64,000 bases of DNA from Selaginella moellendorffii (Eukaryota; Plantae; Lycopodiophyta): positions 3,232,398 to 3,296,397 of the forward strand of contig NW_003314266.1 in NCBI RefSeq assembly GCF_000143415.4, written 5' to 3'. The notes below the pieces were generated by a model. It saw only the letters and a program-made list of their open reading frames with translations, had not been told where the DNA came from and searched no databases. A program made the translations under genes and the position numbers. This document shows positions 7,885 to 63,271 of this stretch, in pieces; the first letter of the stretch is position 1; each line of letters opens with the position of its first letter.

Positions 7885-8694
7885 TTTTTTTGTTTTAAGC
7901 TCTATTTCGTTAAAGTGGGATTTATTCAGTAAAATGGGACTAGGTACAAATTTTCAAGTATTTGAAAATGACGTGAAATTATATGTTTTTTGTCCAGGGG
8001 CTAGACATATCTGGGGCATGGTGACTAGCGCGATGACTTTGTGTCCAGACTGAGTCCATCTGGTTGTATAATAAATCTCATTGTCAAGGTGAACAAGCCG
8101 AATCTGAAGCTAAAGAAGAGCGATGGCATGCGCGCACACACTATTTGTTTGTTCATTGAGCGTGTGGTGAGCTTTCCAAGATGAACGTCATTCCTATTAG
8201 CCAGACTATAACTTAATGGTGAGAACATTTAGATATTATTCAATGTTATCTTTTTCTAATGAATCTAATTGTGAAGGTGTAGCAAGAGGCATTGCTAGTC
8301 TGGAGAAGTCATTTAACTCATTTGACCCTTAGTGTATTTTCATGAAACTAAATAACATTCATATTATTAAGGAATTTCTCTAGTACCTTTTTTTTACGAC
8401 ATAGAGGCTTGCATTTCTTTCAAAGGTGATTTAGTAAAAGGCCTGAGGGCACATGCCATTCTATTTCTCAGACCGGTATTAAAATATACTAGTGCAAAGG
8501 GAAAAAGGTATTTGGTGATCAAGTAAATGGCATGAGGGCACACGCCATTATAAGCCTAAGCGCTAGTGGACACCTCCTTTTTGGTGTCACGCCTCACGCC
8601 TCACGCCATCACGCCATGCCATCACGCCTCCTCTGATTCAGATTTGGATTGTTCACCTTGAAATAAAATACATTAGAAACTTAGTAAAGGAATA

Positions 8695-11600
8695 TTAATG
8701 AATCTCACCTTGAACCCGGGTTATGAATGCTCTTGCTACATCTCTTGCATGGTCTGGCAAGGTGATGGTGGCACTCTGCTTCCGCATCCAACCATGCACA
8801 ACATTATCCACCGATATTCTCATGCAAGGATCCCTTGGATTCAACACCCATCTCTTTTCTAGGCAATCCTTCGTATATCCGGAACTTGGCTTGAACCACT
8901 CCACAGTTACATTGAAGGAGTTAGTTTCCGCGTCCTCCTCTGCATCAGTGATGCAGCGCCCCACCCATATCATTTGTTTTTTATTACTGGGTCTGACAAG
9001 CATGACCATTCCTTTGCAGACCTGTACTGGATTGAATGCTGAATCCGGCTTCTTGTTCCTCGGCCCACAATAGTGATCCTCAACATCGTTATCTGTCACT
9101 GCATTTCCAGAGGACATTGTTCCGCTACTATCTGGTGCTCTGGGTTCTGGCCAAAAGGACTCTTCCAATTCTTCATATACAACCGGCCCATTTTGGATAG
9201 CAGATATAATCTTCTCCCAGTATTTGAGCAAAGGCTTGCACCTCTTAAAATAGGATTCTCCACCAAACACCAACCCCCTCTTCCAGAAGGCAATATGCTG
9301 TCTAATCCCGGCCACTATACTTTCCTGGTCTTTGAGTCCATCCGGGTGCATCGGCCGTGGGGAACCCTGAGGAATCATAGGTTCCCCAGTTATGGGATCT
9401 CTCTTGAAGAGTTCAATGCCATCCATTGGCAGCCACACTGTGTCCCATTCTCTCATCTTGTACCTCATCACTGGAGCACCGTCACGCATGCTGAAATGAA
9501 ACTGAAGAGGCTTGGAGTGGCCAATCAGTGTTTCGAATCCGTCCCTGATGTAGCCTCTTACAAACCCCTTAAAGTCTAGAACCTCTGTCACAAGTGCAGC
9601 TTCAACAGTGCCTTTGATGCAATTTTGGAATTCATCGTAGAGTTGTGGGAGGGTGAGGACATTGGATCGCCGGAGGGACTCTGCCAGGTGACTGAACATG
9701 GCATCGACGTCTTCATGAGTGTGCCCAACCATGAGAAAGCCAAGTGTAACCATTTCAAATATGCCTTTGGCAACAAGCATCGCCAAGTACGCGAAGACGT
9801 ACATGTTTTTGTTCTCACTGCCAGCATTGTCTGTTTGGAGCAGAAGATGGGGTGGAAGGCCACATCGGCCGCAAGAACTTCCTTGAGATTCTGCTTCGTT
9901 TGGATGAGGCTGTGCATTCACCGGGCGACCAACCTCGTCGGAATGGCATGAGGCCTCACGTGATAACCCTACAATCTGACGGCCAACATATTCACTGGGA
10001 TGGCATGGGGCCCCACGCGATACTGCAAGCCTTTGCTCCTCCTCCAGCTGAACCCTGTATGGGGTTCGATCGACAAGGGCCTTATGCAAGGGTTGGCCGT
10101 TCAGCTCAGTCTGCACACTTTGCAGAGACCTTAAGTGTTTTACTAGGGACGCAATCATCATGTTTGCACCCCTGCCACCCCATAGAGGTACAAAGAAGTT
10201 CCCATAGTTCTGGGCACCATGCCAATGAGTGATTATGCCAAACAGAGACACAGGCAGCTGCATGGATGAAGAGATTGCCTTGGGGGTAGGATTGAGTCGA
10301 GGTAAACACGTCTTTTTCTGGTCCATTTTGTCGTGGATGATGCAGAGGTAAGAGTCAGGTCTCTCCATGGAGAGAATCCTGTTATGATATACAGTCCTGC
10401 AACTTCTCTGCTCGATGTTGTGGTCGAGCCGCCTTCTAACCAACGTCTTTCGCTCTTGAGCGCTGCAAGAATTCTTCGACAAAGCCATTTTGATAGCAGT
10501 GCACTCGTCACACTTTGAAAAGCTGGAGTACTTTCCTATACTCACATCCCTGAACCTGTTGCTCCACAATCTACTAAATCTAGATTGGCTCAGCTTCCTG
10601 TAGCCATTACTCTGGAGTTCCCGATTCACATCTTCCAATATGGCCCCCTTGGTATACATGGAAGGGAGAACTTGTTGGGTGTCTCGTGTTCCATCTTCCA
10701 AGAGGCGGGTTTTATGTGGTTGCTGCTCGCTACATGTCTCGACAAACCTCTTGAAGATTGCCTCTCCATATACAACATGACCCTTGGTTTTGTGCGTACC
10801 GTCGTTCCCATGGACTGCCTGTTGAACCCTTTGTTCCTCGAACTCAGTTTTGATTCTGTAGAATGTGCTTCGAGGGACTCCATAAATGATTCTCCATGCC
10901 TTCATGCAGACCAAACCCCTCTGGAAGACCATGCCCCCCACCTGATGTTCTGAAGCATCAACAGATGACCGTAATGCCTCATACACAAAATTGCGAGCTG
11001 CCTTCCAGGACAATGTCTTGTATCTTGCTCTCTCCTCTTCAATAGCATCCCAATCAGCATGTTGACAGCACCTCCTCTTGCAACAAGCAACTGTCGAGAC
11101 CATTCGAACCTCCATCGCCATTTTCTGCCTTTTCGGTTCGTTGCTCAGATCCCTTTGGCTGCGCTTTAGGAAGGTGTACTTTCTTTTCCCATGAAGAGAT
11201 GTTCTGTCATCAGTTGTAGTGGTGTTTGATTGTGAATGCTTCACATTCTCAAACACTAAGTGCCTCAATTTCCACCGCACAATGCTTCTAATAGTCAGAC
11301 TGTTTTCTTCTGTGTCAACAACCTCTAAAATCGCAACTCCAATATCATCCCAGCCCAATTCTTGATTAGCAACCGCATCTCTTGGATCGACAACTGTGGC
11401 TAAGCCCTCAGCTACCACCTCCCCCTCGGGGTTGTTTAGAAACACCTTTGCCTGAATCCATGTAGCACGGTTTTTAAGATCCACGGAGGGAACATGCGTC
11501 ACACTTGCGCTGTCCCCAACATCTGCTTTCTTCTGCAGATTTTTCAAGGCAACAACAACATTTACCCCGACGACCATCTCTCCTCGTTCAATAGCGACCA

Positions 11601-11760
11601 CATTCCCATCGAAGACAGTCTCTACTGATACAGCAGCATTGCCTTCCCCAAGCCTTTGACAGTGTATAACAAAATTCCGATCCATAGACACAAGGGTCCC
11701 TTTTGCAACTCTCTTCCCACCATTCAAAATGTAAACCTTTTCCCCAACCCTGAAGGCCAT
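8695..11760 (-). CDS. DDD-type transposase (DUF7869/Sola-like), 1021 aa, open frame
   Basis: Motifs SKCDEC..H, IIHDKMDQKK, LLLQTDNAGSENKN and FLMVGHTHEDVDAMFS. Upstream CCKRRC..H and VCMKAW Cys cluster. Located inside TIRs. Confidence 0.85.
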   Translation of the reverse strand: MAFRVGEKVYILNGGKRVAKGTLVSMDRNFVIHCQRLGEGNAAVSVETVFDGNVVAIERGEMVVGVNVVVALKNLQKKADVGDSASVTHVPSVDLKNRATWIQAKVFLNNPEGEVVAEGLATVVDPRDAVANQELGWDDIGVAILEVVDTEENSLTIRSIVRWKLRHLVFENVKHSQSNTTTTDDRTSLHGKRKYTFLKRSQRDLSNEPKRQKMAMEVRMVSTVACCKRRCCQHADWDAIEEERARYKTLSWKAARNFVYEALRSSVDASEHQVGGMVFQRGLVCMKAWRIIYGVPRSTFYRIKTEFEEQRVQQAVHGNDGTHKTKGHVVYGEAIFKRFVETCSEQQPHKTRLLEDGTRDTQQVLPSMYTKGAILEDVNRELQSNGYRKLSQSRFSRLWSNRFRDVSIGKYSSFSKCDECTAIKMALSKNSCSAQERKTLVRRRLDHNIEQRSCRTVYHNRILSMERPDSYLCIIHDKMDQKKTCLPRLNPTPKAISSSMQLPVSLFGIITHWHGAQNYGNFFVPLWGGRGANMMIASLVKHLRSLQSVQTELNGQPLHKALVDRTPYRVQLEEEQRLAVSRGAPCHPSEYVGRQIVGLSREASCHSDEVGRPVNAQPHPNEAESQGSSCGRCGLPPHLLLQTDNAGSENKNMYVFAYLAMLVAKGIFEMVTLGFLMVGHTHEDVDAMFSHLAESLRRSNVLTLPQLYDEFQNCIKGTVEAALVTEVLDFKGFVRGYIRDGFETLIGHSKPLQFHFSMRDGAPVMRYKMREWDTVWLPMDGIELFKRDPITGEPMIPQGSPRPMHPDGLKDQESIVAGIRQHIAFWKRGLVFGGESYFKRCKPLLKYWEKIISAIQNGPVVYEELEESFWPEPRAPDSSGTMSSGNAVTDNDVEDHYCGPRNKKPDSAFNPVQVCKGMVMLVRPSNKKQMIWVGRCITDAEEDAETNSFNVTVEWFKPSSGYTKDCLEKRWVLNPRDPCMRISVDNVVHGWMRKQSATITLPDHARDVARAFITRVQGEIH

Positions 11761-12116
11761 TCTGAAAGTGCAGAAAAGAAGTTAAGACCATACAAAAAAT
11801 GATTGGAGAATGGCCTAAATCATAACATACCAAATAGCATGAGGCCACATGCCATTATTCAAACATGCTATTGACACCCACGTGAAATTTCACATTCACA
11901 AAATTGGCATGAGGCCTCATGCCATCTTGATATACACACAGCTGCAGGCAAGTAAAAACATACATGACAATACGCTAGCCATGAAATTGCAAGGGCCCAA
12001 GATGGCATGTGGCCTCATGCCATTTCTAAATGTGGTCCTAAACCATTCCATGGTGAACATACCAGGAAGCACAAGTGCCGAATATAAGGAGGAAGCGGTA
12101 GCCACACCAAAGACAG

Positions 12117-12190
12117 TGCCGCTCGCAACACCGCAACTACTCGTAGCGCCGCTCGCAACACCGCAACTGCTCGTAGCGCCGCTCGCACAA
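12117..12190. repeat. 30-bp tandem repeat, ~2.5 copies (GCCGCTCGCAACACCGCAACTRCTCGTAGC)
   Basis: Read directly; mirrored in copy 2 at ~43355-43426. Confidence 0.8.
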
Positions 12191-13046
12191 ACTGCCACTC
12201 GCATAAACTGCCGCTCGCAATGGCGCTCGCAATGCCGCAACCGCTTGTAGACACATAAACCACAGCTCACAACGCAGCTTACACAAGCAGCGCTCACTGT
12301 GCTCAGCAGAACCAAGAACACGGCGCACAAAAATGATAGACCTAGGAATGAGTTCGAGAATTCAAAAATAACACACGCTTGAACGTCACATCAAATCCTT
12401 TGACAAACCAGATCTTATGATTCCTCTGACAAATTTCAAACTAAGTAGCTTCTAGACTTTGCTGTCGGAGGTTGAACTTTGTCACATCATGTCCTTGCCT
12501 CGATCCAGCTGTGCTATGTCAGTGATTCGAACTTTGCCATGCCGTGTCAGCAATCCGCACCAAGATTATTCGCCGTGTAAAGGAATAATTATGCTGTGTG
12601 TGTACGTCCATTTATGGCAATATAAGGCCACATGCCATTCAAAGAATAATGCTAGTCGAGCATTTTTTGGTGCATTTTTGGGTTCAAAATTGCATGAGCC
12701 CATACGCTATAAAGTTTACCTGTACCAAAAATAGAAACAGCTTTATTTACTTGGGAATTTAAGTGGTTGAGGCATTTTTAAACTTACAAACATATGCCCT
12801 ACTTACATTCCTTTGGTTGCTTAAAATTCAAAAATATTATAAACCTTTCTTTTTGCATTTTCAATGTTTTCAATTATGGTTTTTGATTTTCGCAGGACCA
12901 GCCTAGCAATCTATTTGCATCCCGTCATGTTTATAGCTAGCTTTCGTTTGTCCCCTTCGCTAGCCTGAGATACATCTGCTCGGCATCTGCCTCTTACAGC
13001 ATTTGCCCAGAAAGGGCATCTTTCTTCACGCAGCATTTGCCACATG

Positions 13047-13071
13047 TTTAGGGTTAGGGTTTAGGGTTTAG
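13047..13071 (+). repeat. Short plant telomere-like tract (TTTAGGG-like x3.5) inside the transposon
   Basis: TTTAGGGTTAGGGTTTAGGGTTTAG. Copy 2 equivalents at ~41595-41620 and ~42467-42497. Confidence 0.8.
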
Positions 13072-14540
13072 CAATTCAGTAGCTTGATAAACATGCAAAT
13101 ACAGAACTTGATGCAAAATCCTTTGATATGTCACAATGCCCCTAGGACCATAAACACATTTCAATAGAGAGGGTCCTTTCATTTCATAACTCCTTACGTA
13201 GATCTTGGTGAAACTAGAGTTAGTGAAGTTGGTTTCTTGTGATCCCGCATCTGATTGTGATGTCCCTTTGCAGTGTCAATGGAAAGGTCAATGCACACCA
13301 AACTGTAGAATCTTGGAGCAAAATAACGGTCGGATCTATGGCAAATGCCCCTGAAACATTGTAAGGCTCGTGTGGTCTCATGTGGTGTCCGATCGAGATG
13401 CTTCTTTGCAGGGTCATCAAAAGAATATTGTATACCATTCTGTAAAATCTAGTTGCGATCTAACGGTTGGATCTCCAGAAAACTCAAAACAATCTTGCGC
13501 GTGTTAGAATATTCTAGGAATATACTCCTATGTGCTCCTGAAAATGGCATGCGACCCCACGCCATTCAAGAGATAACGCCAGATGACGCCGAGCATTTTT
13601 TGATGCATTTTTTGGGATCAAAATTGCATGAGCCTACACGCTTGAACGTCACATCAAATCCTCTGACAATTTATTTAGCTGAACATCTGGCATTTTTGGA
13701 AATACAAGATGCTTTGGAATATCCAATCATGCATGGTATAAATATAGCGAGTGGTATTAAATGATATCCCAATCATGATCTTTCTATTGGATTTCGCGTG
13801 CATGCAGTCCGAGGAATGATGATGTTGCGGATTTCTTTTGGATTTCACGTGCATGCATGCGCGCAGCGATCCAGAAATTAATGGTGGCGCCCAAGTTCGA
13901 GGAATGATGATGTGGCGGGATTACCAACCGTCGTGACATTTCGCGCGTGTGAGGTTAGGTTTTGCATTTTGCTTCGTACTCGCACTCGCACACTCGTGCT
14001 CGCATCGCGCTCCCACTTCTCTATAGGTTTCTCGTGTGCATCAGCGTCCACTCGCGCTTGCATCACACTCGCGCTCGCATCGTGCTCGTGTGCATCGGCG
14101 TCCACTTCAAGACACACCCAATTTGTAACTTCGCCGCCAACTCTGCCGCCCACTCCACGCAGCCCACTTGGTGTCCCGGGAGATTTCAGCGCCACTCTCC
14201 AGCTGTAAGTGGCAGAGTAGCCTTGCTGCTACGATCCGCTGCACACACAGTGCACATTCGCCAGCGAGTCCGGTTGTCACGCCTCCATTCGGCTTCAAAT
14301 GGTAAGTCTTTTAGGCCAAGTAGAAAATGGCATGAGGCCACATGCCATTCAGTAGCAACATTGGCATGCACCGATTGGGCTCTCGAGTGCAGTCCGGTTA
14401 TAAATGGCGTGTAGCCTCACGCCATCTTAGGATGCAGCCTCATGACATCTGATGCAGTGGTGAATGGCGTGTGGCCTCACGTTATTTCCAGCTGCTAGCT
14501 TTTCATCTGTCAGCTCTAATTGTTGTGCATTTCTGAATAA

Positions 14541-17500
14541 GTGAGGAATTGCGTTCTTCTTCCAGCCACTGTCAATGTGGATGCAGAGAAGGGGGAGGAG
14601 CTCACCAGTTGGACTTTCGAGATGGAAGGCGAGGATCTAAGGCTGTACAACACAGATGGTGGGAGAAAAGAATGCATGGGGATCCTCATCCAAGTGACAG
14701 ACACTCCATGCAGTTCCATGCAAGAATATGGACTGGCACTTGTGGTAGAGACAGCGTCCGCCTTCAAGATCCACCTTACACATCCTAGCGGCTTCCCGGA
14801 GGGGGCCAGCGGCTATGAGGAATTCCTAGAGGGAGCTAGGGAGAGGTTGTCCAGGAGGCCCACAATTTCAAAGACGCTGCGGGTCTATAAAGATCACATG
14901 GAATCCACGGACCTCACCTACGGCGATGTTCAAAAACTATATTCCAACATTGAGCCGTTGAGAGTGCCTCCAGTTCACGAAGCGAAGGGGAAGGGGGTCG
15001 ATCTGGAAACTACCCCAAAGCAGAAAAGGGTGGTCAAGCTCAAGCCGACGTCCGACTCTCCTCCAAAAAAGAAGCTACTCGGTGATGCCATTGCCTCGGG
15101 TTCGAACACTACACCCACCAAAAAGAAGAGCCGCAAAGAGCAGAAAGAGCAAGAAGAGGCAGCAAAAATCGTCGCAGATAATAGTACTTGTTACTATTCC
15201 AACAAAGTATATACAATCAACGTGAGCCGTATCGACATCCAAAGCAAATACAACCACAGGCTAGTATCTGATGAGTGGGTGGAGAAACTGAAGCAGAAGA
15301 TGCTGGCAAGTCCAGTAACACCCGACATCGCAGACGTGATCCCCTACTACCGAACAATGAAGGGCGAGACGAGGTTTCCAGACTTGATCAATAGGAAGGT
15401 GTTGGACAATCAGAACATCCGGTTCTATGCCGTCTCCGGGCAGCATTCTAGCTTGGCGATGCAAGAGATAGTTGTGGATATTATGGTGGGCGAGGAGGTG
15501 AAGAAAGTCTTCAAGACAAGAGTTGTCCGCCTGATAAAAGGCAACTCGCCCCTCCGATCTATCATATACATCTCCCACGCGCAGAATGTCAAGCAAGAAA
15601 CGTGCTACAAATCGGGTTTGCACGAGACATTGGCACGAACACGGAAGCTCTGGGTTCAACTGAAGAAGCCACAAAAACCAGGACAAGGACGTGCACTAGC
15701 AACTAGCGCCTGGCAGGTAAGCCTCGTTGCATGTGGCATAGCATGTGGCCTCACGCCATTTCCATTGCAGGAATTCTCGAGTCTTCTCTTGAAAACACTG
15801 GGGGTCAATGACACACTCAGCATCCATAACATTCTACTCGCGACAAAAGTTGTTTTTGACAAATGGGTAGATGTGCTGAGGAGGTACCATGACGGGGAGT
15901 TGCTAAACTCAATGGGTGTGGAGGACGGCCGGAAGCCCAATGATTTGAAGCTCAACGCCTTGCATTTCTCGCGGTCTCTAGACGACGACGACCTTCTGAC
16001 AGTGGCTAATGCTCTTCTACGTGGTGAGGTAGTCTTCAACAAGACCAAAATGACTCCCGGCCATATTGTGACATACGAGGACTTGTGCACGACTCTGAGA
16101 GCTCGTGCGCTATTGAAGGATTGGATCTTCGAGCAAGTGGCCGTGGAGAGGGTGAGCATCGACACCACGCAAGAGATGATGGAAGCGCTGGATTTGTCAA
16201 ATGAAGACATCGACGGGTACGTGAAGGGGGCCCCCAAGTTCATCGATCTGCTGCGGGATGCCACAAAAAGTAAAGCTGAGAAGTTGGATCAGTATCCAAA
16301 TTTCATTAAGATTGATGTCGACCGCCGGCTTCAGAAACAGCTCGACCCCGCAGCAGAGGCCTATCGAGAACCTTACCGGGTATACTTGAATTCGGATGAG
16401 GATCAAAGGTGGAGGAGCATCGTTTCCCGCAGAGATGAGCAGGTCAAGAACATCTTTTGTGTGATGGACTTCACAAACGAGGAGATCACTCATGCAGACG
16501 AAGTCAGCTCCATCATTGACTTAATGGTGGGACTTGCGGAGGTGGAATCTTCAGTCCACTATATGATCTACGACTCCGAATCCTATCACAAGTTCTGGAA
16601 GGCCTTGAACGAGGTGAAGGCTCGGTTGAAAGGCAAGGAGATGCGGGAGATCCATGGGATAATGGCTAAGAAGAAGATACCGACGAATGTCCGCATCTTC
16701 ACACTCGCCCTTGTTATTGGTCCTGCAGCAGAGTGGGACTGGAGTGACTTCCCAACTTCGTTCGACAAGGCCAATCGAATTGATCTGAGGGAGGTCAATT
16801 TACCCGTGCCTGAGGAACTGAAGACGGCTATGGAGCTTTCGAATCCAAAGAAAGCTCCAGGTGCAGCATGGGAAATGCTCAGCTGGGTCTTCAACGCAAT
16901 AGCGGGTGGGTCACCTGCTTCCGACTCCAAGGGCAAATGCGTTGTCGAGTACAACTGCGGCGGACTATTCTTTCGAGCCGCACTACTCAAGGGTGTCCCG
17001 TGTGTTGCGGTGACAAACTCCATTGAAGAGGTGACTTCAATGGAGCATATAATTACAGTTGCCAAAGAAAAACAGTATCTTCTTTGCGAACCTGGTGAGT
17101 ACGCACTTTAAGTTTAAATGTTATCTCACAAGCTCTGTATGCAGGAGCGTGGCCACCCCCAGATGCTGAAACGGCGTTAATAGCTACTGTTGAAGATACC
17201 CATGTTGGGCCGAGCTCACAACCTGCACAAGGTAAGGTCACGTGAGGCCTCATGCCATTTTGATTATAGATCGTTGTGAATATTCAGACACGAGGACTGA
17301 AAAGCGCACTGGTGGCGCGTCGAAGAAGGACAAACAGACAAGCAATAGGAAAAAAGGAGGTACAAATTATATTTGCAATGGCGTGTGGTCTCATGCCATT
17401 CCTTGCAGGAGACACTTCTTTAAAGGCAAAACAGGCAAGCACCAGCCAAGCTCAAACTGACAGTGGTCATAAAAAGCGAAAACAAGTTGGACAGTCGTCG

Positions 17501-19890
17501 GGATCAGAGGTGTTTGATTCGAAAAGGAAGAAGGGCAACGAAAAGATGATAGGTTATGCCTCGCGGTTATGGCGTGTGTGCTCATGCCATTCATTGCAGA
17601 TCAAGGGCTGAGTGAAAGCAGGGAGTCACCACCTCCTGACTCAGATTCCTATGGCCGACTCCCCTTCCCCAATCTCAATGGAGAGGTATAATGGATGAGG
17701 GATGCTTTTCAAGTCAGGGCCACGTTTTTCTCATCTCGTCGTCTTCGAAGGGTGCGAGAACGTGCAGAAACCATGTTAAGACAGTCGGGTGAGGATACGG
17801 TCCTAGGTCACGCACTAAAACAAGCTATGGATGTCTTGTATTTTGAGATGGAGACTTAGCCAGATGATTTTCCCAAGATGGTCCTGGAAGAACAAGCCAT
17901 CCAGCCTGAGTAGCCTATGGAAGAAATGCAGGAGGGGGATGAGGAGCCAGAGAAAGATAATGAGCAGGAAGAGCAGAAGGACGAAGAGGAGGACAAAGAA
18001 GAGGAGGACGAAGAAGAGGAGGACGAAGAGGACTTGGATGGTCCTCACAATGGTGACGATCACAATAACGACGACGACGATGATGACGACGATGGCCAGC
18101 CTGAGGTGGCCAAAGAGCAGCGGAGGAAGGTCATACAAGACAAACCATCAGGTAAATAATAGTACATCCATTCCTAACGTTTTACCATTTCTAACATTGT
18201 CCATGTAGGTCGCAGAGCAAATGGTAAGTAGAGATTATTCAGTTGAATTTACAAACTCTAGCCTTTAGTGTCGAGGAAGGATAGTGCCAAGCAAGGGTCG
18301 AAACGTATGTCCAATCCTTCAGAATCAGCAGTGCGCCCAAGTGATATCGGTCCTAGTTCCTCAATAGCAGTTGATGGTAAATACAGTATAGTCGATTCAA
18401 TGTGCTAATGAGTTTGTTTTTAGTAGCACGGGAGGATACCATCTCAATCGAAGGGAGATATTTGGACATGCATATGGATCCACCACTGGACTCTACTTGC
18501 CTGCAAGAGTCATCAGAGCTGGTGGAGGCTACTATCCATATCAACGCCAAGCAAGCTGACCACGATCCACTTGATGCTGCCCATACCACTGAGTCGATCT
18601 TGTCCACGTATCCAACTGACGGTGACCAGGCGCCATTGGACCCGCATGAGGCCGCCCCAGCCACCGAGCCGGTCGTATCCTCATTTCCAACGGACTCAAC
18701 GTGTGCCCAATCGTCTGACTACGCGCCGTTGGAACCTCCCTACACCGCCCCTGTTGCCTGTTCGGTCATGTCCACTTTGCCAACGGAGGCACCAGCTGAA
18801 ATGGCGTGTGATCACACGCCATCGGAACCACCCCATGCCACTGTTGAGCCAATTGTACCAGAGTCTACAGCTGAAATGGCATGTGCCCACACGCCATCGG
18901 ATGCAATTGACCCCACATTGCAGAGGAGAGTATTTCCGCCCTTCACGTTTCCTCGACCAAAACCCTCTCAACGACCATCGGGAGCACCATTCGCTAATAT
19001 TGTAGATGGTAAAATTGACTTGTATCATTTTTTATGCTGACGCATTTCATTTCAGAGTCACGGCGAAGGTACTGTATCATTTTTGATCTGAACGGTGTCC
19101 TTTTCTCCCATGAGCGTGGCTCGTCCTCGAATGTCATTGCACCCTCCAAAGCCTGCGGTCGCAAGTTGGTCAAAAGAGACAGATTCACATTAATCACACG
19201 GGAGAAACTGCGGGATCTAATAATGACCATGCGACACTTAAAACAGAGGGCCGGGTTCAATTTGCAATTGGGAGTTTGGACATCCATGATGCGCCACAAT
19301 GTATTAACGTTGCTACAGATGATGCACGATCAGACGCGAGTAATATTACCATTTGACTTTCTCCTAACGCAGGAGGATTGCTTGACTATGGTCCATGTGA
19401 GGGGTAGCAAGCCCATCTTCGTCAAGCCAGAGGCTGTAGTGATGAACCGGACTGCTAGGTCAAGTGAAATCCTCATCATCGATGACTCGCCGATTAAAAC
19501 TGCAGCGAACACGCACACATATGCAGTGCACCCCATCTTTTGCAGTATGGAAACTAGGGAGAAGAAACCGTATGTTCTGGGGGACCTTGCAAAACGGCTT
19601 GGAGCGATGGTGATAGAGAACCGGCCAGTCCAGGAGGTGGAACGGTATATCAGAAGCCATTTGATCGGACAGACACCAGTCATCATTTATGGCATGTATA
19701 TTGTCTAGCCAAGCACTATCCGCATCTCCATAATCTGCTAAACCGGATGGGTTCTTCGACCACTGAACATGAGCGTGGACGTATTAGAGAAGAGATGGCA
19801 TTACTATTGGGTTTAAATCCTGATAGTGTGGAGAGTGATGAAAATCCAAGATTATTGTATAGGCGTTGGAGGCAAAAAATAACAGTCTGA
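14541..19890 (+). pseudogene. Multi-exon cargo gene: ParB/Srx-like + degenerate N4/N6 MTase-like + acidic/Pro-rich + FCP1-like HAD domain; 3' part inactivated in this copy
   Basis: 856-codon ORF followed by frame-preserving GT-AG introns at 15717-15770, 17095-17144, 17232-17287, 17360-17408, 17553-17599, ~18152-18208, ~18224-18268, ~18377-18423 and ~19009-19055. Three premature stops in the 17600-18151 exon and a 28-bp deletion at ~19640 relative to copy 2. Start codon uncertain. Confidence 0.72.
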
Positions 19891-20407
19891 GATGGCATGT
19901 ATTTATTTAAAAATGTAACTTATTATGGCATGGGGTTCCATGCCATTGTATTAATATCAGAAGACAATTCTTTGAGAGGATTTGCATTATACTAGAAGTG
20001 TTACAGCATGTTATTGGAAGTCTACGAAGTTGTTTTATTAATAAGGGGAAAGTAAAGATTGAATGGGGACTTGGGCTCCACCTAGACTTGGAGCAACTGA
20101 GCCAATATTAAAAGGATGGAAAGAAATTGGACGACGATGACAAGGAGAAGAGAGAGGTGAAACAATGGCAGGGGGAGGAGAAGTGATTGAGTAGACATTT
20201 CCTTGTTTAAAATAAAATGGCATGTGCCTCAATGCAGTTGAATTTTGTTATATTTATATACTATATAAAGGTTTGGAAACCTTATTTTACAAGTGGGATA
20301 ATGACAATTCCCACTTTAACGAAATAGAGCTTTTTTTTTATTTAGCTCGTTTTGATTGTTTGATTACCTTTGCCTTTTTTTCCCCCTTTTTCCTTTCTTC
20401 TTGCCAA

Positions 20408-21378: not shown

Positions 21379-21395
21379 GAGCTGTCTGTTTGGAC
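21351..21395 (+). promoter_or_regulatory. -1 ribosomal frameshift signal: GGGAAAC plus downstream stem-loop
   Basis: G GGA AAC in the gag frame, short spacer, then an 11-bp stem GTCCAAACAGA/TCTGTTTGGAC. Pol is in the -1 frame. Confidence 0.78.
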
Positions 21396-25109: not shown

Positions 25110-25507
25110 GGAGGGGGTGCTGTCAGGAATCCCCCAATTCTTGCCACATTCCTGACTCTCGCCGGATTCCTGACCTGCAGACCACATTCCTGACTCTCAA
25201 GACACTTCCCTATTCCTGACTCTCGAGACACTTTCCTATTCCTGACTCTCGAGACACTTCCCGATTCCTGAGTCTCGAGCCACATTCCTGATGATGATGT
25301 GGTGCCTCCTCGACCTCAGCTATATTTAGGCCGTCCTCGATCCAAGAGTGGTGGAGCTTCATCAACCTATAGTATATATAGGTTAGCCTTGTTCCATTTC
25401 TCCACAATCTGAATCAACGCCAGTCTAAGGCCTCTTCTTTGTTTCCACTAGCTTTTCTCTTTGTCTTTTTGCATTTTCCAATCTTGATCTTGTCAGGGGT
25501 CTTGACA

Positions 25508-33400: not shown

Positions 33401-34719
33401 GAGTATGAAAACCATAATAAAGAATAATTTTGTAATTCTTGTAATAAATCTTGCAAATTAATAAAGTAATATATTTTTATAAATCAAAGTGTCGTTTCTC
33501 TCGTTCATTAGTACTTGTGTCAGTTTTGGTAGGTTGACTTCAGCACTTCGGTGCATGGGTCCAATTCATAACCATAGGGATAACTATTATAGACTGATCA
33601 CAAATCCCCGCCTCTCTCTCGATGACTCACTATTGCAAAGGGGCATGGTCGTGTAAACAACTTAATTTGCCAATTTATAATAATTGTCTAAATCTTCCCG
33701 ACAGGGTTGATTTCTTGCTCAAGGGAAGTTGGGCCTTTGGCCTTCTCCTTATGTCCCTGCGGGCAAGGATGTATCATTCCTTTGTAAGCCAAGTGGTACT
33801 CGGAGCAACAAGGGTGGCTAACTCCATTAGTCATTTCCTTGTCAGTGACAGCCGGAGGGTGTCTGAGCTTTAACGTCTTTGGATGTAGAGAGGAGAGGTC
33901 ATTCTATAACTCATTTAAGTTGGTGTGTTTCCCACATAGTGTGCTTTTCATTAACTTTCGGAGTTCTTTCCTTGACGGTTTGCTAGACTCAGATATGCAT
34001 CGACGAGGATGTCGATCTTCCTCAAGGGGGGGAAGAGTGTTATGAATGTGACTTCGGGTATCGAAAGTGATTTTGTGTTAGTCTCAGTTCAGTCCCAAAT
34101 AGTATTTATGGAAAGTGTCTAGATTTGATCATTTGGCATATCTATGGAATATAGAGGTCGGCCTGAACACAATGGTGTTCGTCCCGTGTCCAAATTCGCA
34201 ATCTAGGGACATTCCATATTTAGTAAGTTTCGAGCTTGTCCCAGAGACTAACTCCCAGAGTATTAAAGAAGGCTTGGAAGCTCTATTTCGTTAAAGTGGG
34301 AATTGTCATTATCCCACTTGTAAAATAAGGTTTCCAAACCTTTATATAGTATATAAATATAACAAAATTCAACTGCATTGAGGCACATGCCATTTTATTT
34401 TAAACAAGGAAATGTCTACTCAATCACTTCTCCTCCCCCTGCCACTGCTTCACCTCTCTCTTCTCCTTGTCATCGTCGTCCAATTTCTTTCCATCCTTTT
34501 AATATTGGCTCAGTTGCTCCGAGTCTAGGTGGAGCCCAAGTCCCCATTCAATCTTTACTTTCCCATTATTAATAAAACAACTTCGTAGACTTCCAATAAC
34601 ATGCTGTAACACTTCTAGTATAATGCAAATCCTCTCAAAGAATTGTCTTTTAATATTAATACAATAGCATGGAACCCCATGCCATAATAAGTTACATTTT
34701 TAAATAAATACATGCCATC

Positions 34720-37700
34720 TCAGACTGTTATTTTTTGCCTCCAACGCCTATACAATAATCTTGGATTTTCATCACTCTCCACACTATCAGGATTTAAACC
34801 CAATAGTAATGCCATCTCTTCTCTAATACGTCCACGCTCATGTTCAGTGGTCGAAGAACCCATCCGGTTGAGCAGATTATGGAGATGCGGATAGTGCTTG
34901 GCTAGACAATATACATGCCATAAATGATGACTGGTGTCTGTCCGATCAAATGGCTTCTGATATACCGTTCCATCTGCCATTTGGTTGATTTCTGCAGCCA
35001 CCTCCTGGACTGGCCGGTTCTCTATCACCATCGCTCCAAGCCGTTTTGCAAGGTCCCCCAGAACATACGGTTTCTTCTCCCTAGTTTCCATACTGCAAGA
35101 GATGGGGTGCACTACATATGTGTGCGTGTTCGCTGCAGTTTTAATCGGCGAGTCATTGATGATGAGGATTTCACTTGAGCTAGCAGTCCGGTTCATCACT
35201 ACAGCCTCTGGCTTGACGAAGATGGGCTTGCTACCCCTCACATGGACCATAGTCAAGCAATCCTCCTGCGTTAGGAGAAAGTCAAATGGTAATATTACTC
35301 GCGTCTGATCGTGCATCATCTGTAGCAACGTTAATGCATTGTGGCGCATCATGGATGTCCAAACTCCCAATTGCAAATTGAACCCGGCCCTCTGTTTTAA
35401 GTGTCGCATGGTCATTATTAGATCCCGCAGTTTCTCCCGTGTGATTAATGTGAATCTGTCTCTTTTGACCAACTTGCGACCGCAGGCTTTGGAGGGTGCA
35501 ATGACATTCGAGGACGAGCCACGCTCATGGGAGAAAAGGACACCGTTCAGATCAAAAACGATACAGTACCTTCGCCGTGACTCTGAAATGAAATGCGTTA
35601 GCATAAAAAATGGTACAAGTCAATTTTACCATCTACAATATTAGCGAATGTTGCTCCCGATGGTCGTTGAGAGGGTTTTGGTCGAGGAAACGTGAAGGGC
35701 GGAAATACTCTCCTCTGCAATGTGGGGTCAATTGCATCCGATGACGTGTGGGCACATGCCATTTCAGCTGTAGACTCTGGTACAACTGGCTCAACAGTGG
35801 CATGGGGTGGTTCCGATGGCGTGTGATCACACACCATTTCAGCTGGTGCCTCCGTTGGCAAAGTGGACATGACCGAACAGGCAGCAGGGGCGGTGTACGG
35901 AGGTTCCAATGGCGCGTAGTCAGACGATTGGGCACACGTTGAGTCCGTTGGAAATGAGGATACGACCGGCTCGGCGGCTGGGGCGGCCTCATGTGGGTCC
36001 AATGGCGCCTGGTCACCGTCAGTTGGATACGTGGACAAGATTGACTCAGTGGTATGGGCAGCATCAAGTGGAGCGTGGTCAGCTTGCTTGGCGTTGATAT
36101 GGATAGTAGCCTCCACCAGCTCTGATGACTCTTGCAGCCAAGTCGAGTCCACTGGCGGATCCATATGCATGTCCAAATATCTCCCTTCGATTGAGATGGT
36201 ATCCTCCCGTGCTACTAAAAACAAACTCATTAGCACATTGAATCGACTATACTGTATTTACCATCAACTGCTATTGAGGAACTAGGACCGATATCACTTG
36301 AGCGCACTGCTGATTCTGAAGGATTGGACATACGTTTCGACCCTTGCTTGGCACTATCCTTCCTCGACACTAAAGGCTAGAGTTTGTAAATTCAACTGAA
36401 TAATCTCTACTTACCATTTGCTCTGCGACCTACATGGACAATGTTAGAAATGGTAAAAGGTTAGGAATGGATGTACTATTATTTACCTGATGGTTTGTCT
36501 TGTATGACCTTCCTCCGCCGCTCTTTGGCCACCTCAGGCTGGCCATCGTCGTCATCATCGTCGTCGTCGTTATTGTGATCGTCACCATTGTGAGGACCAT
36601 CCAAGTCCTCTTCGTCCTCCTCTTCTTTGTCCTCCTCTTCTTTGTCCTCCTCTTCGTCCTTCTGCTCTTCTTGCTCATTATCTTTCTCTGGCTCCTCATC
36701 CCCCTCCTGCATTTCTTCCATAGGCTGCTCAGGCTGGATGGCTTGTTCTTCCAGGACCATCTTGGGAAAATCATCTGGCCGAGTCTCCATCTCAAAATAC
36801 AAGACATCCATAGCTTGTTTTAGTGCGTGACCTAGGACCGTATCCTCACCCGACTGTCTTAACATGGTTTCTGCACGTTCTTGCACCCTTCGAAGACGAC
36901 GAGATGAGAAAAACGTGGCCCTGACTTGAAAAGCTTCCCTCATCCATTGTACCTCTCCATTGAGATTGGGGAAGGGGAGTCCACCATAGGAATCTGAGTC
37001 ATGAGGTGGTGACTGCCTGCTTTCACTCAGCCCTTGATCTGCAATGAATGGCATGAGCACACACGCCATAACCGCGAGGCATTACCTATCATCTTTTCGT
37101 TGCCCTTCTTCCTTTTCAAATCAAACGCCTCTGATCTCGATGACTGTCCAACGTGCTTTCGCTTTTTATGACCACTGTCAGTTTGAGCTTGGCTGGTGCT
37201 TGCCTGTTTTGCCTTTGAAGAAGTTTCTCCTGCAAGGAATGGCATGAGACCACACGCCATTGCAAATATAATTTGTACCTCCTTTTTTTCTATTGCTTGT
37301 CTGTTTGTCCTTCTTCGATGCGCCACCAGTGCGCTTTTCAGTCCTCGTGTCTGAATATTCACAACGATCTATAATCAAAATGGCGTGAGGCCTCACGTGA
37401 CCTTACCTTGTGCAGGTTGTGAGCTCGGCCCAACATGGGTATCTTCAACAGTAGCTGTTAATGCCGTTTCAGCATCTGGGGGTGGCCACGCTCCTGCATA
37501 CAGAGCTTGTGAGATAACATTTAAACTTAAAGTGTGTACTCACCAGGTTCGCAGAGAAGATACTGTTTTTCTTTGGCAACTGTAATTATATGCTCCATTG
37601 AAGTCACCTCTTCAATGGAGTTTGTCACCGCAACACACGGGACACCCTTGAGTAGTGCGGCTCGAAAGAATAGTCCGCCGCAGTTGTACTCAACAACGCA

Positions 37701-40075
37701 TTTGCCCTTGGAGTCGGAAGCAGGTGACCCACCCGCTATTGCGTTGAAGACCCAGCTGAGCATTTCCCATGCTGCACCTGGAGCTTTCTTTGGATTCGAA
37801 AGCTCCATAGCCGTCTTCAGTTCCTCAGGCACGGGTAAATTGACCTCCCTCAGATCAATTCGATTGGCCTTGTCAAACGAAGCTGGGAAGTCACTCCAGT
37901 CCCACTCTGCTGCAGGACCAATAACAAGGGCGAGTGTGAAGATGCGGACATTCGTCGGTATCTTCTTCTTAGCCATTATCCCATGGATCTCCCGCATCTC
38001 CTTGCCTTTCAACCGAGCCTTCACCTCGTTCAAGGCCTTCCAGAACTTGTGATAGGATTCGGAGTCGTAGATCATATAGTGGACTGAAGATTCCACCTCC
38101 GCAAGTCCCACCATTAAGTCAATGATGGAGCTGACTTCGTCTGCATGAGTGATCTCCTCGTTTGTGAAGTCCATCACACAAAAGATGTTCTTGACCTGCT
38201 CATCTCCGCGGGAAACGATGCTCCTCCACCTTTGATCCTCATCCGAATTCAAGTATACCCGGTAAGGTTCTCGATAGGCCTCTGCTGCGGGGTCGAGCTG
38301 TTTCTGAAGCCGGCGGTCGACATCAATCTTAATGAAATTTGGATACTGATCCAACTTCTCAGCTTTACTTTTCGTGGCATCCCGCAGCAGATCGATGAAC
38401 TTGGGGGCCCCCTTCACGTACTCGTCGATGTCTTCATTTGACAACTCCAGCGCTTCCATCATCTCTTGCGTGGTGTCGATGCTCACCCTCTCCACGGCCA
38501 CTTGCTCGAAGATCCAATCCTTCAATAGCGCACGAGCTCTCAGAGTCGTGCACAAGTCCTCGTATGTCACAATATGGCCGGGAGTCATTTTGGTCTTGTT
38601 GAAGACAACCTCACAACGTAGAAGAGCATTAGCCACTGTCAGAAGGTCGTCGTCGTCTAGAGACCGCGAGAAACGCAAGGCGTTGAGCTTCAAATCATTG
38701 GGCTTCCGGCCGTCCTCCACACCCATTGAGTTTGGCAACTCCCCGTCATGGTACCTCCTCAGCACATCTACCCATTTGTCAAAAACAACTTTTGTCGCGA
38801 GTAGAATGTTATGGATGCTGAGTGTGTCATTGACCCCCAATGTTTTCGAGAGAAGACTCGAGAATTCCTGCAATGGAAATGGCGTGAGGCCACATGCTAT
38901 GCCACATACAACGAGGCTTACCTGCCAGGCGCTAGTTGCTAGTGCACGTCTTTGTCCTGGTTTTTGTGGCTTCTTCAGTTGAACCCAGAGCTTCCGTGTT
39001 CGTGCCAATGTCTCGTGCAGACCCGATTTGTAGCACGTTTCTTGCTTGACATTCTGCGCGTGGGAGATGTATATGATAGATCGGAGGGGCGAGTTGCCTT
39101 TTATCAGGCGGACAACTCTTGTCTTGAAGACTTTCTTCACCTCCTCGCCCACCATAATATCCACAACTATCTCCTGCATCGCCAAGCTAGAATGCTGCCC
39201 GGAGATGGCATAGAACCGGATGTTCTGATCGTCCAACACCTTCCTATTGATCAAGTCTGGAAACCTCATCTCGCGCTTCATTTTTTGGTAGTAGGGGATC
39301 ACGTTTGCGATGTCGGGTGTTACTGGTGTTACTATTCCAACAAAGTATATACAATCGACGTGAGCCGTATCGACATCCAAAGCAAATACAACCACAGGCT
39401 AGTATCTGATGAGTGGGTGGAGAAATTGAAGCAGAAGATGCTGGCAAGTAGTACTATTATCTGCGACGATTTTTGCTGCCTCTTCTTGCTCTTTCTGCTC
39501 TTTGCGGCTCTTCTTTTTGGTGGGTGTAGTGTTCGAACCCGAGGCAATGGCATCACTGAGTAGCTTCTTTTTTGGAGCAGGAGAGTCGGACGTCGGCTTG
39601 AGCTTGACCACCCTTTTCTGCTTCGAGGTAGTTTCCAGATCGACCCCCTTCCCCTTTGCTTCGCGAACTGGAGTCACTCTCAACGGCTCAATGTTGGAAT
39701 ATAGTTTTTGAACATCGCCGTAGGTGAGGTCCGTGGATTCCATGTGATCTTCATAGACCCGCAGCGTCTTTGAAATTGTGGGCCTCCTGGACAACCTCTC
39801 CCTAGCTCCCTCTAGGAATTCCTCATAGCCGCTGCCCCCCTCCGGGAAGCCGCTAGGATGTGCAAGGTGGATCTTGAAGGCAGACGCTGTCTCTACCACA
39901 AGTGCCAGTCCATATTCTTGCATGGAACTGCATGGAGTGTCTGTCACTTAGATGAGGATCCCCATGCATTCTTTTCTCCCACCATCTGTGTTGTACAGCC
40001 TCAGATCCTCGCCTTCCATCCCGAAAGTCCAACTGGTGAGCTCCTCCCCCTTCTCTGCATCCACATTGACAGTGG
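34720..40075 (-). pseudogene. Cargo gene, copy 2: 3' exons open, 5' exon broken by a 123-bp inversion
   Basis: ORFs 39399-39947, 37527-39395, 36479-37069, 35598-36236 and 34720-35604 are near-identical to the copy-1 exons. Confidence 0.72.
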
Positions 40076-41125
40076 CTGGAAGAAGAATGCAATTCCTCGC
40101 CTATTCAGAAATGCACAACAATTAGAGCTGACAGATGAAAAGCTAGTAGCTGGAAATAACGTGAGGCCACACGCCATTCACCACTGCATCAGATGTCTTG
40201 AGGCTGCATCCTAAGATGGCGTGAGGCTACACGCCATCTGTAACCGGACTGCACTCGAGAGCCCAATCGGTGCATGCCAATGTTGCTACTGAATGGCATG
40301 TGGCCTCATGCCATTTTCTACTTGGCCTAAAAGACTTACCATTTGAAGCCGAATGGAGGTGTGACAACCGGACTCGCTGGCGAATGTGCACTGTGTGTGC
40401 AACGGATCGTAGCAGCAAGGCTACTCTGCCACTTACAGTTGGAGAGTGGCGCTGAAATCTCCCGGGACGCCAAGTGGGCTGCGTGTGGGTGGCGGAGTGG
40501 GCGGCGGAGTTGGCGGCGAAGTTACAAACTGGGTGTGTCTTGAAGTGGACGCCGATGCACACGAGCGCAATGCGAGCGCGAGTGTGATGCAAGCGCGAGT
40601 GGATGCCAATGCACACGAGAAACCTGTAGAGAAGTGGGAGCGCGAGTGGGAGCGCGATGCGAGCGTGAGTGGGAGCGCGATGCGAGCGCGAGTACGAAGC
40701 AAAATGCAAAACCTAACCTCACACGCGCGAAATGTCACGACGGTTGGTAATCCCGCCACGTCATCATTTCTCGGACTTGGGCGCCACCATTAATTTCTGG
40801 ATCGGCGCGCGCATGCGTGAAATCCAAAAGAAATCCGCAACGTCATCATTCCTCGGACTGCATGCACGCGAAATCCAAAAGAAAGATCATGATTGGGATA
40901 TCATTTAATACCCTCGCTATATTTATACCATGCATGATTGGATATTCCAAAGCATCTTGTATTTCCAAAAATGCCAGATGTTCAGCTAAATAAATTGTCA
41001 GAGGATTTGATGTGATGTTCAAGCATGTGGGCTCATGCAATTTTGATCCCAAAAAATGCACCAAAAAATGCTCGGCGTCATCTGGCGTTATCTCTTGAAT
41101 GGCGTGGGGCCGCATGCCATTTTCA

Positions 41126-42983: not shown

Positions 42984-43520
42984 CGCGGATCGCTGACACG
43001 GCATGGCAAAGTTCGAATCACTGACATGGCACAGCTGGATTGAGGCAAGGACATGATGTGACAAAGTTCAACCTCCGACAGCAAAGTCTAGAAGCTACTC
43101 AGTTTGAAATTTGTCAGAGGAATCATAAGATCTGGTTTGTCAGAGGATTTGATGTGACGTTCAAGCGTGTGTTATTTTTGAATTCTCGAACTCATTCCTA
43201 GGTCTATCATTTTTGTGCGCCGTGTTCTTGGTTCCGCTGAGCGCAGTGAGCGCTGCTTGTGTAAGCGGCGTTGTGAGCTGTGGTTTATGCGTCTACAAGC
43301 GGTTGCGGCATTGCGAGCGCCATTGCGAGCGGTAGTTTATGCGAGTGGCAGTTTGTGCGAGCGGCGCTACGAGCAGTTGCGGTGTTGCGAGCGGCGCTAC
43401 GAGTAGTTGCGGTGTTGCGAGCGGCACTGTCTTTGGTGTGGCTACTGCTTCCTCTTGATATTCGGCACTTGTGCTTCCTGGTATGTTCACCATGGAATGG
43501 TTTAGGACCACATTTAGAAA

Positions 43521-63239: not shown

Positions 63240-63271
<32 letters not shown>

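What the first reader, a model, noticed from the sequence alone, without database searches (positions are those of the whole stretch)
15190..17060. Cargo protein looks like a ParB/Srx domain fused to a degenerate beta-class amino-DNA-methyltransferase
Seen: TINVSRIDIQSKYNHRLVSDEWVEKLKQKM..ADVIP..RFYAVSGQHSSLAM (15208-15461) follows the ParB/Srx pattern (..R......v..L..sm...hhh....y.hhdGqHR..A), with Ser replacing the usual Arg. Downstream, YRVYLNSD..VKNIFCVMDFTN (16375-16477) and KKAPGAAWEMLSWVF..KGKCVVEYNCGGLFFRAALLKGVPCVAVTNSIEEV (to ~17040) parallel the motif IV (DPPY) ... motif I (GD.VLDPFxGSGTT..AA...GR..IGIE) order of beta-class N4/N6 MTases. Knowledge: ParB-MTase fusions are common in phages, and bacterial-type N4C MTases occur in bdelloid rotifers and Marchantia. 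Inference: a prokaryote-derived module rides a plant DNA transposon. Both catalytic motifs are eroded, so it is probably a DNA-binding or decoy protein rather than an enzyme.
Basis: partly seen in the sequence, partly recalled or inferred. Interest (0 to 1): 0.9.

Follow-up and report, generated by a model that had tools for sequence, protein, structure and literature searches.

The report
Transposon gene: ParB fold, dead methylase
A 12.4-kb cut-and-paste transposon in a non-seed plant carries a second gene whose protein has a true ParB/sulfiredoxin fold followed by the worn-down remnant of a bacterial-type DNA methylase; this pairing is already published for algal Sola1 transposons, so this is a decayed land-plant variant, not a new system.

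Summary
ORF 14541-17111 (+) is an uninterrupted 856-codon frame. It lies inside a complete transposon (7897-20332) with 24-bp terminal inverted repeats and a 4-bp target duplication.

**ParB/Srx domain: confirmed by fold.**
- An AF2 model of residues 200-392 has pLDDT 75.8.
- Foldseek returns essentially only ParB/Noc/KorB/Srx-type chains.
- The usual Arg box reads SGQHS here, and [S/D]GQH[S/T] in all ten family sequences aligned.

**Beta-class methylase ancestry: supported by profiles, not by fold.**
- A profile of the family's last ~110 residues finds M.RsrI as the best of 177,635 PDB sequences (E 0.0014).
- Pfam N6_N4_Mtase hits the liverwort relative below threshold (E 4e-4).
- hhalign against nine real beta-class methylases gives P 8e-5; controls give 0.47-0.98.
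- The window's own sequence alone gives P 0.54. It is tied to the family by P 6e-7.
- The AF2 model of this domain failed (pLDDT 45.6).
- The motif IV parallel is positional only. DPPY is absent from every relative examined.

**Context.** This scan has reported the same gene many times elsewhere in this genome. ParB-methylase accessory genes of Sola1 transposons are published (PMC12477816). RNA-seq shows almost no expression.

The parts
7897..20332 (.). Transposon copy 1, 12,436 bp. It has 24-bp terminal inverted repeats (AAGCTCTATTTCGTTAAAGTGGGA) at 7897-7920 and 20309-20332, flanked by the 4-bp duplication TTTT.
8695..11760 (-). 1021-codon ORF with Pfam DUF7869, the presumed transposase. It is transcribed divergently from the cargo gene.
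   Evidence: DUF7869 E 5e-42. The Sola1 assignment comes from earlier notes and was not tested here.
14541..17111 (+). Cargo gene main open frame, 856 codons. A likely acceptor lies near 14566 and a possible donor near 17095, so further exons probably lie on both sides.
15180..15602 (+). ParB/Srx-fold domain (ORF residues about 214-354). The Box II equivalent SGQHS lies at 15435-15449.
15717..15770 (+). Predicted 54-nt in-frame intron (GTAAGC...TTGCAG) containing a palindrome site at 15738-15759.
   Evidence: Homologues end in or are split after W-K/Q at the same column.
15771..16292 (+). Helical middle domain of unknown fold (residues 411-584). It is the best-conserved part shared with the Selaginella, liverwort and metagenomic relatives.
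   Evidence: Atlas features give only weak hits: 0.77 for DndB and 0.75 for DUF6551.
16293..17108 (+). Methylase-derived domain (residues 585-856). Motif IV position DFTN lies at 16467-16478, a motif X-like helix at 16842-16892, and motif I remnant VVEYNCGG at 16941-16964. The motif II position reads T-N at 17013-17018.
   Evidence: The fold test was inconclusive.
14327..14485 (.). Three copies of the element's 22-24-bp palindrome (consensus ATGGCRTGWGGCCWCAYGCCAT) just upstream of the cargo frame. Further copies lie at 17237, 17378, 17569, 18801 and 18876.
   Evidence: 38 sites in the window, 0 expected.
19034..19708 (+). NIF/FCP1-like phosphatase ORF downstream on the same strand. It is probably a later exon of the same gene, following an acidic stretch at 17917-18159.
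34278..47775 (.). Transposon copy 2, inverted and about 98% identical, with target duplication TTGG. Its cargo gene (37530-40097, minus strand) is broken by a stop at codon 51 and by a 123-bp inverted segment at 39327-39449.

Best explanation
The ORF is the main coding block of the accessory (non-transposase) gene of a large TIR DNA transposon.

Shown:
- Residues about 214-354 adopt the ParB/Srx fold.
- The last ~100 residues descend from the motif X-I-II part of a beta-class N6A/N4C DNA methyltransferase of the M.RsrI / PF01555 type.
- The gene belongs to an old, intron-bearing eukaryotic family, found also in a liverwort, in Selaginella and in unidentified eukaryotic contigs.
- The window's copy is the most degenerate member at the methylase motifs.

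Inferred:
- The methylase part no longer methylates. It has no DPPY-type tetrapeptide, a weakened glycine loop, and Asn instead of the acidic motif II residue. It survives as a structural or DNA/SAM-sensing module.
- The ParB-like part lacks the Arg box used by ParB CTPases and by sulfiredoxin. Together with the following helical region it acts as the site-specific binder of the element's own 22-24-bp palindromes, analogous to ParB-parS or KorB-operator complexes. This would mark or regulate the transposon, with the downstream acidic tail and FCP1-like phosphatase as effector parts.
For: ParB fold:
- (model and two structure searches).
- ESM features point to DUF3723 (0.96), ParB_N (0.92) and, below the 0.9 line, DUF6551 (0.89).

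Family and conserved intron.

Methylase ancestry:
- PDB profile search has M.RsrI on top at E 0.0014, aligned over HPTQKP...VLDFFAGSG.
- PF01555 hits the Calypogeia piece at E 4.1e-4, profile positions 163-214 of 221.
- hhalign P 8.3e-5 against 0.47-0.98 for reversed or shuffled controls.
- Family without the window sequence: P 1.3e-5.
- Window sequence against the rest of the family: P 6e-7.
- All named Atlas feature hits are N6_N4_Mtase clusters, at lead level only, 0.77-0.79.

Transposon context.

Published precedent: the Ectocarpus Sola1-1_Ec32 accessory protein has ParB plus an N4C/N6A methylase (PMC12477816). ParB-domain accessory genes lie next to inverted-repeat arrays in red-algal Plavaka elements (bioRxiv 10.1101/2025.02.11.637652).
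Against: - No Pfam, NCBIfam or PDB sequence hit for the window's protein itself.
- hhalign of the window sequence alone against methylases gives P 0.54.
- The AF2 model of the C-terminal domain is unreliable (pLDDT 45.6), and its structure hits are unrelated alpha/beta folds, TIM-barrel enzymes among them.
- The half that should carry motifs IV-VIII shows no detectable similarity to methylases (P 0.79).
- Binding of the palindromes by this protein is untested.
- Three RNA-seq runs of the species gave 2 reads in total, so neither expression nor splicing is shown.
- No transposase-like or phosphatase-like sequence was found beside the relatives in L003, L004 or L005.
Confidence: 0.72

Rival explanations
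1. The C-terminal domain is unrelated to DNA methylases. The motif resemblance is chance plus a generic nucleotide-binding beta-loop-alpha element.
For: Every detected match covers only about 50 residues. All scores are sub-threshold or modest: 20.8 bits against a Pfam cut-off of 26.7, and E 0.0014. The fold test failed. The first half shows no signal.
Against: Three differently built searches converge on the same family and the same register, HP.xKP helix plus hhD.F.G.G strand-loop. One scans all 24,736 Pfam models and one all 177,635 PDB sequences. Shuffled and reversed controls score at noise. The motif X helix directly before motif I is typical of PF01555 enzymes rather than of Rossmann folds in general.
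Confidence: 0.12
2. The domain is still an active, non-canonical DNA methyltransferase that modifies the element's own sites.
For: Some relatives keep a near-canonical SAM loop (VLDFFSGG, VIDAFSGG) and the acidic motif II residue. The published algal counterparts are predicted to be active enzymes.
Against: No relative examined has a (D/N/S)PP(Y/F/W) tetrapeptide. They read DFTN, DFSK, EFSA, DATT, DSAN and ADLR. The window's copy also lost the motif II acid (Asn) and part of the glycine loop.
Confidence: 0.05
3. The ParB/Srx domain works as an enzyme (nuclease, NTPase or kinase, as in other members of the fold) rather than as the palindrome binder. The palindromes would then be bound by the transposase.
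For: The fold includes kinases (SerK, SbnI), sulfiredoxin and nucleases among the hits. Several residues are invariant in the family: G, Q and H of the GQH triplet, R128, N150 and R169.
Against: The Arg of the DGxHR/GERR box, used for phosphate contacts in ParB CTPases and sulfiredoxin, is Ser or Thr in all ten aligned sequences. The best structural matches are DNA-binding ParB, KorB and PadC proteins.
Confidence: 0.2
4. At this locus the gene is simply a silent relic. The open frame in copy 1 reflects the youth of the insertion, not present function.
For: The two copies differ by about 28 non-synonymous and 12 synonymous changes outside the rearranged part, close to neutral. Copy 2 is broken. 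RNA-seq gives 2 reads in three runs. A 28-bp indel between the copies alters the end of the phosphatase ORF.
Against: This does not conflict with the identity of the domains. Family-wide conservation over plant-scale distances implies function in active master copies.
Confidence: 0.5

Closest known systems
Accessory gene of Sola1-1_Ec32, a giant Sola1 transposon of Ectocarpus (PMC12477816)
   Same: It is a large TIR transposon. The second gene lies on the strand opposite the transposase. The protein has a ParB-like domain followed by an N4C/N6A-type DNA methyltransferase domain, and is proposed to bind and modify its own element.
   Different: The algal methylase domain is recognisable as such, whereas here it is a remnant without catalytic motif IV. 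Here the gene continues into an acidic tail and an FCP1/NIF-like phosphatase. phmmer against 1.84 billion representatives returned only 12 weak hits, and none of the ten scanned against Pfam carries a recognisable ParB or methylase domain.
M.RsrI / Pfam N6_N4_Mtase (PF01555), beta-class amino-methyltransferases
   Same: The motif X helix (HP.xKP...L) runs directly into motif I (hhD.F.G.G) and then a beta-2 strand. This is the only significant PDB hit of the family profile.
   Different: There is no (D/S)PP(Y/F) motif. The score is below Pfam's cut-off. The fold is not demonstrated. The window's copy lacks the motif II acid.
Bacterial ParB/Noc/KorB/PadC and sulfiredoxin (ParB/Srx fold)
   Different: The GERRxR / DGxHR arginine box is replaced by [S/D]GQH[S/T]. 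There is no Pfam ParB_N hit. It is eukaryotic, intron-bearing and fused to other domains.
PAG3 of red-algal Plavaka transposons (bioRxiv 10.1101/2025.02.11.637652)
   Same: It is a ParB-like accessory protein of a giant DNA transposon that has arrays of inverted repeats next to the gene.
   Different: It belongs to a different transposon superfamily, and its partner domain is a 2OG-dependent oxygenase rather than a methylase remnant.

Membership tests
ParB/Srx superfamily | ParB/Srx alpha/beta core fold | tested here: met
ParB/Srx superfamily | Arg-containing phosphate-binding box (GERRxR / DGxHR / GCHR) | tested here: not met
   The window reads SGQHS (15435-15449). All ten aligned family sequences read [S/D]GQH[S/T].
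ParB/Srx superfamily | Match to Pfam ParB_N (PF02195) or a sister model | tested here: not met
   No hit for the window protein at E up to 10. One relative hits DUF6551 at E 0.13. Only protein-language-model features point there.
Beta-class N6A/N4C DNA methyltransferases (PF01555) | Pfam model above the gathering score | tested here: not met
   No hit for the window sequence. The Calypogeia relative scores 20.8 bits against a cut-off of 26.7.
Beta-class N6A/N4C DNA methyltransferases (PF01555) | Catalytic motif IV (D/N/S)PP(Y/F/W) | tested here: not met
   The window reads DFTN. Relatives read DFSK, EFSA, DATT, DSAN and ADLR. The region has no profile similarity (P 0.79).
Beta-class N6A/N4C DNA methyltransferases (PF01555) | Motif X helix followed by SAM-binding motif I (DPFxGSG) and the acidic motif II | tested here: inconclusive
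   Homology of this segment is supported at family level. The window's version is degenerate: EYNCGG, with Asn at motif II.
Beta-class N6A/N4C DNA methyltransferases (PF01555) | Rossmann-type methyltransferase fold with the circular order IV ... X-I-II-III | tested here: inconclusive
   AF2 model pLDDT is 45.6. Foldseek and VIA hits are unrelated. Only the predicted strand/helix order is compatible.
Sola1-transposon ParB-methylase accessory genes | The gene lies inside a TIR-bounded element with a target-site duplication, opposite the transposase | tested here: met
   24-bp TIRs. TSDs are TTTT and TTGG for the two copies. The transposase ORF is on the minus strand and the cargo on the plus strand.
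Sola1-transposon ParB-methylase accessory genes | The transposase belongs to Sola1 | not tested
   Only Pfam DUF7869 was found. The Sola1 label comes from earlier notes of this scan. The 4-bp TSD fits what I recall of Sola elements.

The most novel reading that the evidence does not exclude
Land-plant Sola-type transposons may encode a self-recognition module. A ParB-fold protein that has lost its nucleotide-binding arginines would dock on about 17-19 private palindromes per element. It would use a catalytically dead methylase domain as a DNA or SAM reader, and a fused FCP1-like phosphatase to act on RNA polymerase II at the element. That would be a transposon-encoded system controlling its own chromatin or transcription. 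Selaginella appears to have domesticated the middle-plus-methylase-like half as a host gene.
Probability: 0.25. Interest if true: 0.7.

Novelty: new variant of a known kind. Interest (0 to 1): 0.45.

Why it matters
ParB-plus-methylase accessory genes of giant DNA transposons are a recently noticed class, reported in brown, red and green algae. They are thought to let a transposon bind and mark its own DNA. This locus extends the class to a non-seed land plant.

In this lineage the methylase has become a pseudo-enzyme, while the ParB fold, a helical middle domain and the cis palindromes persist. That separates what is dispensable (methyl transfer) from what is kept (the ParB fold, the middle domain and the palindromes). 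It also gives a concrete protein-site pair to test. The Selaginella host-gene relative offers a possible domestication case.

Tried and rejected
- Pfam, NCBIfam and PDB sequence searches with the whole ORF found nothing.
- The word-indexed 5.8-billion-protein search with the ORF found nothing. With the C-half alignment it returned only one of the query's own rows.
- A profile of the ParB region against PDB sequences gave only chance hits.
- tblastn of the ORF against 50,697 phage records gave no match.
- Metagenome scans: the ParB motif pattern gave 66 pattern matches, none confirmed. P0019 gave one locus, L002, which is a bacterial glycosyltransferase cluster and a chance match. An earlier attempt failed for lack of conserved columns.
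- The AF2 model of the C-terminal domain from a 9-row alignment had pLDDT 45.6. Its Foldseek and VIA-align hits are unrelated alpha/beta folds (several of them TIM barrels) and are disregarded.
- PHROGs gave only E 0.3-0.5 hits. Three of the five are methyltransferase families; two have unknown function. This is too weak to count.
- RNA-seq was laid on 14400-19800. There were 2 reads in one run and none in two others, and no joints. The intron and expression could therefore not be checked. The contigs of run X1 may be DNA.
- A search for transposase-like or NIF-like sequence beside the relatives (L001, L003, L004, L005) found none. The claim in earlier notes that liverwort relatives share the whole design was not reproduced at this one liverwort locus.

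Full report
**What is there**

The window contains two inverted copies, about 98% identical, of one 12.4-kb element: 7897-20332 and 34278-47775. Both end in the same 24-bp inverted repeat. They are flanked by different 4-bp duplications, TTTT and TTGG. These are therefore two separate insertions of a cut-and-paste transposon.

Copy 1 carries three coding blocks:
- a 1021-codon ORF with Pfam DUF7869 on the minus strand;
- the 856-codon ORF 14541-17111 on the plus strand;
- further downstream on the plus strand, an acidic stretch and a NIF/FCP1-like phosphatase ORF.

A 22-24-bp palindrome (ATGGCRTGWGGCCWCAYGCCAT, up to 3 mismatches) occurs 38 times in the window against 0 expected. Of these, 36 sites lie inside the two copies.

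**Check of the observation**

All quoted peptides are present within a few bases of the stated coordinates. The proposed intron 15717-15770 has GTAAGC...TTGCAG ends, is 54 nt long and in frame, and holds a palindrome copy.

Distant homologues support the intron position. Their gene models either stop just after the aligned W-K/Q by reading into an intron, or are spliced there: L004 reads TGG AAG|GTGGGT, and the two Selaginella isoforms read WQ(AS)EF and WQEF. In the annotated Calypogeia model the intron lies three codons earlier.

**ParB/Srx domain**

No sequence library recognises the protein. phmmer against 1.84 billion representatives gave 12 weak hits, E 3.5e-9 to 2.6e-4. They come from Selaginella, from the liverwort Calypogeia fissa, and from unidentified Logan, ENA and JGI contigs.

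Ten sequences align over ORF residues 200-392, with an invariant G-Q-H inside [S/D]GQH[S/T]. AF2 on this alignment gave pLDDT 75.8. Two structure searches then agree:
- Foldseek against the PDB returns ParB, Noc, KorB, PadC, sulfiredoxin, SbnI and two other ParB-like entries in all top 50 rows (best E 2.3e-4, probability 1.00).

ESM features agree as well, with DUF3723, ParB_N and DUF6551. The fold claim is confirmed.

**Methylase-like domain**

The window's sequence alone gives nothing, and hhalign against nine genuine beta-class enzymes gives P 0.54. I therefore recovered the same domain from relatives:
- Selaginella P0001;
- P0019 (JGI);
- L005 (Logan);
- L004 (ENA), which carries the whole ParB-middle-C-terminal-acidic order;
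- L003 (Calypogeia).

Their motif I reads VLDFFSGG, VIDAFSGG, ILDFFSGE, VIDINTGG and IVEYGCGG, against VVEYNCGG here. The preceding helix reads NPFAKPRQLYHRL in Calypogeia and HPHVKSPHVF in L005, against NPKKAPGAAWEML here.

Four tests followed:
- (a) Pfam. The only family hitting the Calypogeia piece is N6_N4_Mtase: E 4.1e-4, 20.8 bits, below the 26.7 cut-off, profile positions 163-214 of 221.
- (b) hhalign of the six-member family against YhdJ plus eight phage methylases. This gave P 8.3e-5 over motif X-I. One reversed and twelve column-shuffled templates gave P 0.47-0.98. Without the window sequence, P is 1.3e-5 at probability 81%.
- (c) A profile of the last ~110 residues against all 177,635 distinct PDB sequences. 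The best and only significant hit is M.RsrI, the prototype beta-class N6-adenine methylase (E 0.0014). It aligns over HPTQKP...VLDFFAGSG...GRNSIC.
- (d) The window sequence against the independently realigned rest of the family. P is 6e-7 at probability 92%, over motif I-II.

So the ancestry follows by transitivity and is well supported for about 50-60 residues.

**What is not supported**

- The AF2 model of residues 585-856 has pLDDT 45.6, and its hits are noise. The Rossmann fold is therefore not shown. Only the predicted strand/helix order is compatible with a beta-class arrangement.
- The first half, where motif IV should be, has no similarity to methylases (P 0.79). With a greedy extension, the collinear alignment does place DFTN on DPPY, but at zero confidence.
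- No relative has a DPPY-type tetrapeptide.
- In the window's copy the acidic residue after strand 2 is Asn. It is E or D in four of the five relatives and Ser in P0019.

I read this as a methylase-derived pseudo-enzyme. The window's copy is the most eroded.

**State of the two copies and expression**

Copy 2's cargo gene has Q51 changed to a stop. The 123 bp coding residues 217-257 are inverted in place.

Outside that segment the copies differ by about 40 substitutions, about 28 non-synonymous and 12 synonymous. That is near-neutral decay after insertion. Many of copy 1's private letters differ from both copy 2 and the contigs of run X1.

Three RNA-seq runs of the species, each about 12% sampled, gave two reads in total. 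The gene is silent or nearly so in those samples, and the splicing is unverified.

**Comparison with what is known**

- The Ectocarpus TE survey describes a 1104-aa ParB-plus-N4C/N6A-methylase protein on the strand opposite the transposase in the 21.5-kb Sola1-1_Ec32. [quoted passage not shown]
- The Bostrychia genome paper describes ParB-domain accessory genes next to inverted-repeat arrays in Plavaka elements.
- ParB-linked methylases in eukaryotes were surveyed earlier (PMC4738411).
- This scan has flagged the same gene many times on other pieces of this genome, and follow-ups reached the same reading.

The present case is therefore a land-plant variant of a known kind. Its distinguishing points are the family-wide loss of motif IV, the GQH[S/T] box, the added acidic tail and FCP1-like phosphatase, and a Selaginella relative. 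That relative sits among ordinary host genes and lacks the ParB part.

**Mechanism**

This is inferred, not shown. The ParB-like part plus the helical region would bind the element's palindromes. The dead methylase would serve as a structural or ligand-sensing module. The C-terminal phosphatase would be the effector.

Confidence by part:
- About 0.9 for the ParB fold.
- About 0.8 for methylase ancestry.
- About 0.8 for catalytic death in this copy.
- About 0.35 for palindrome binding by this protein rather than by the transposase.

Noticed in passing
window 39327-39449 (copy 2) against 15189-15311 (copy 1): In copy 2, a 123-bp segment coding the first strand and helix of the ParB domain lies in the opposite orientation to its surroundings. 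This is a small in-place inversion inside the gene.
   Followed up: partly
L001:10001-11425 (Selaginella moellendorffii GL377575.1, proteins P0001/P0013): A Selaginella gene encodes only the middle and methylase-like domains, with IVEYGCGG and an acidic motif II residue. It sits among ordinary host genes (ArfGap, VQ), with no ParB-like sequence within 10 kb upstream. This may be a domesticated derivative.
   Followed up: partly
window 43521-44152: A perfect-junction 316-bp inverted duplication with 0 nt between the arms lies in copy 2, over the palindrome-rich region that corresponds to 11626-11834 of copy 1.
   Followed up: no
window 41126-42934: Copy 2 carries an internal tandem duplication with a period of about 870-980 bp (98-99% identical). 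It is absent from copy 1 and explains why copy 2 is about 1 kb longer.
   Followed up: no
window 20356-25155, with related pieces at 54365-56751 and 975-1274: A Ty3/chromovirus-type LTR retrotransposon (gag, protease, RT, RNase H, integrase, chromodomain) starts 24 bp after the right end of transposon copy 1. A 90% identical partial copy lies inverted near 54.4-56.8 kb.
   Followed up: no
window 19640 region against 34975-34998: A 28-bp indel between the two copies changes the reading frame at the end of the NIF/FCP1-like ORF. The ORF is 224 aa in copy 1 and 294 aa in copy 2. Which state is ancestral is unknown.
   Followed up: partly
window 58225-58967 and 63012-63624: Two related arrays of 12-nt and 23/35-nt tandem repeats lie inside a 4.8-kb direct duplication (57333-59815 against 62112-64000).
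   Followed up: no
window 14203-14300 and 14566: Two GTAAGT donors (one directly after an ATG at 14297-14299) and a pyrimidine-rich CAG acceptor at about 14566 suggest one or two tiny 5' exons upstream of the long frame. The mechanical GTG start at 14541 is therefore probably not the real start.
   Followed up: no
L004 (ENA ERZ25067493, contig ctg70717): An unidentified eukaryotic contig holds the full ParB-middle-methylase-like-acidic architecture, with the best-preserved motif I (VLDFFSGG). It has one in-frame stop and one frameshift in a 2x-coverage assembly.
   Followed up: partly
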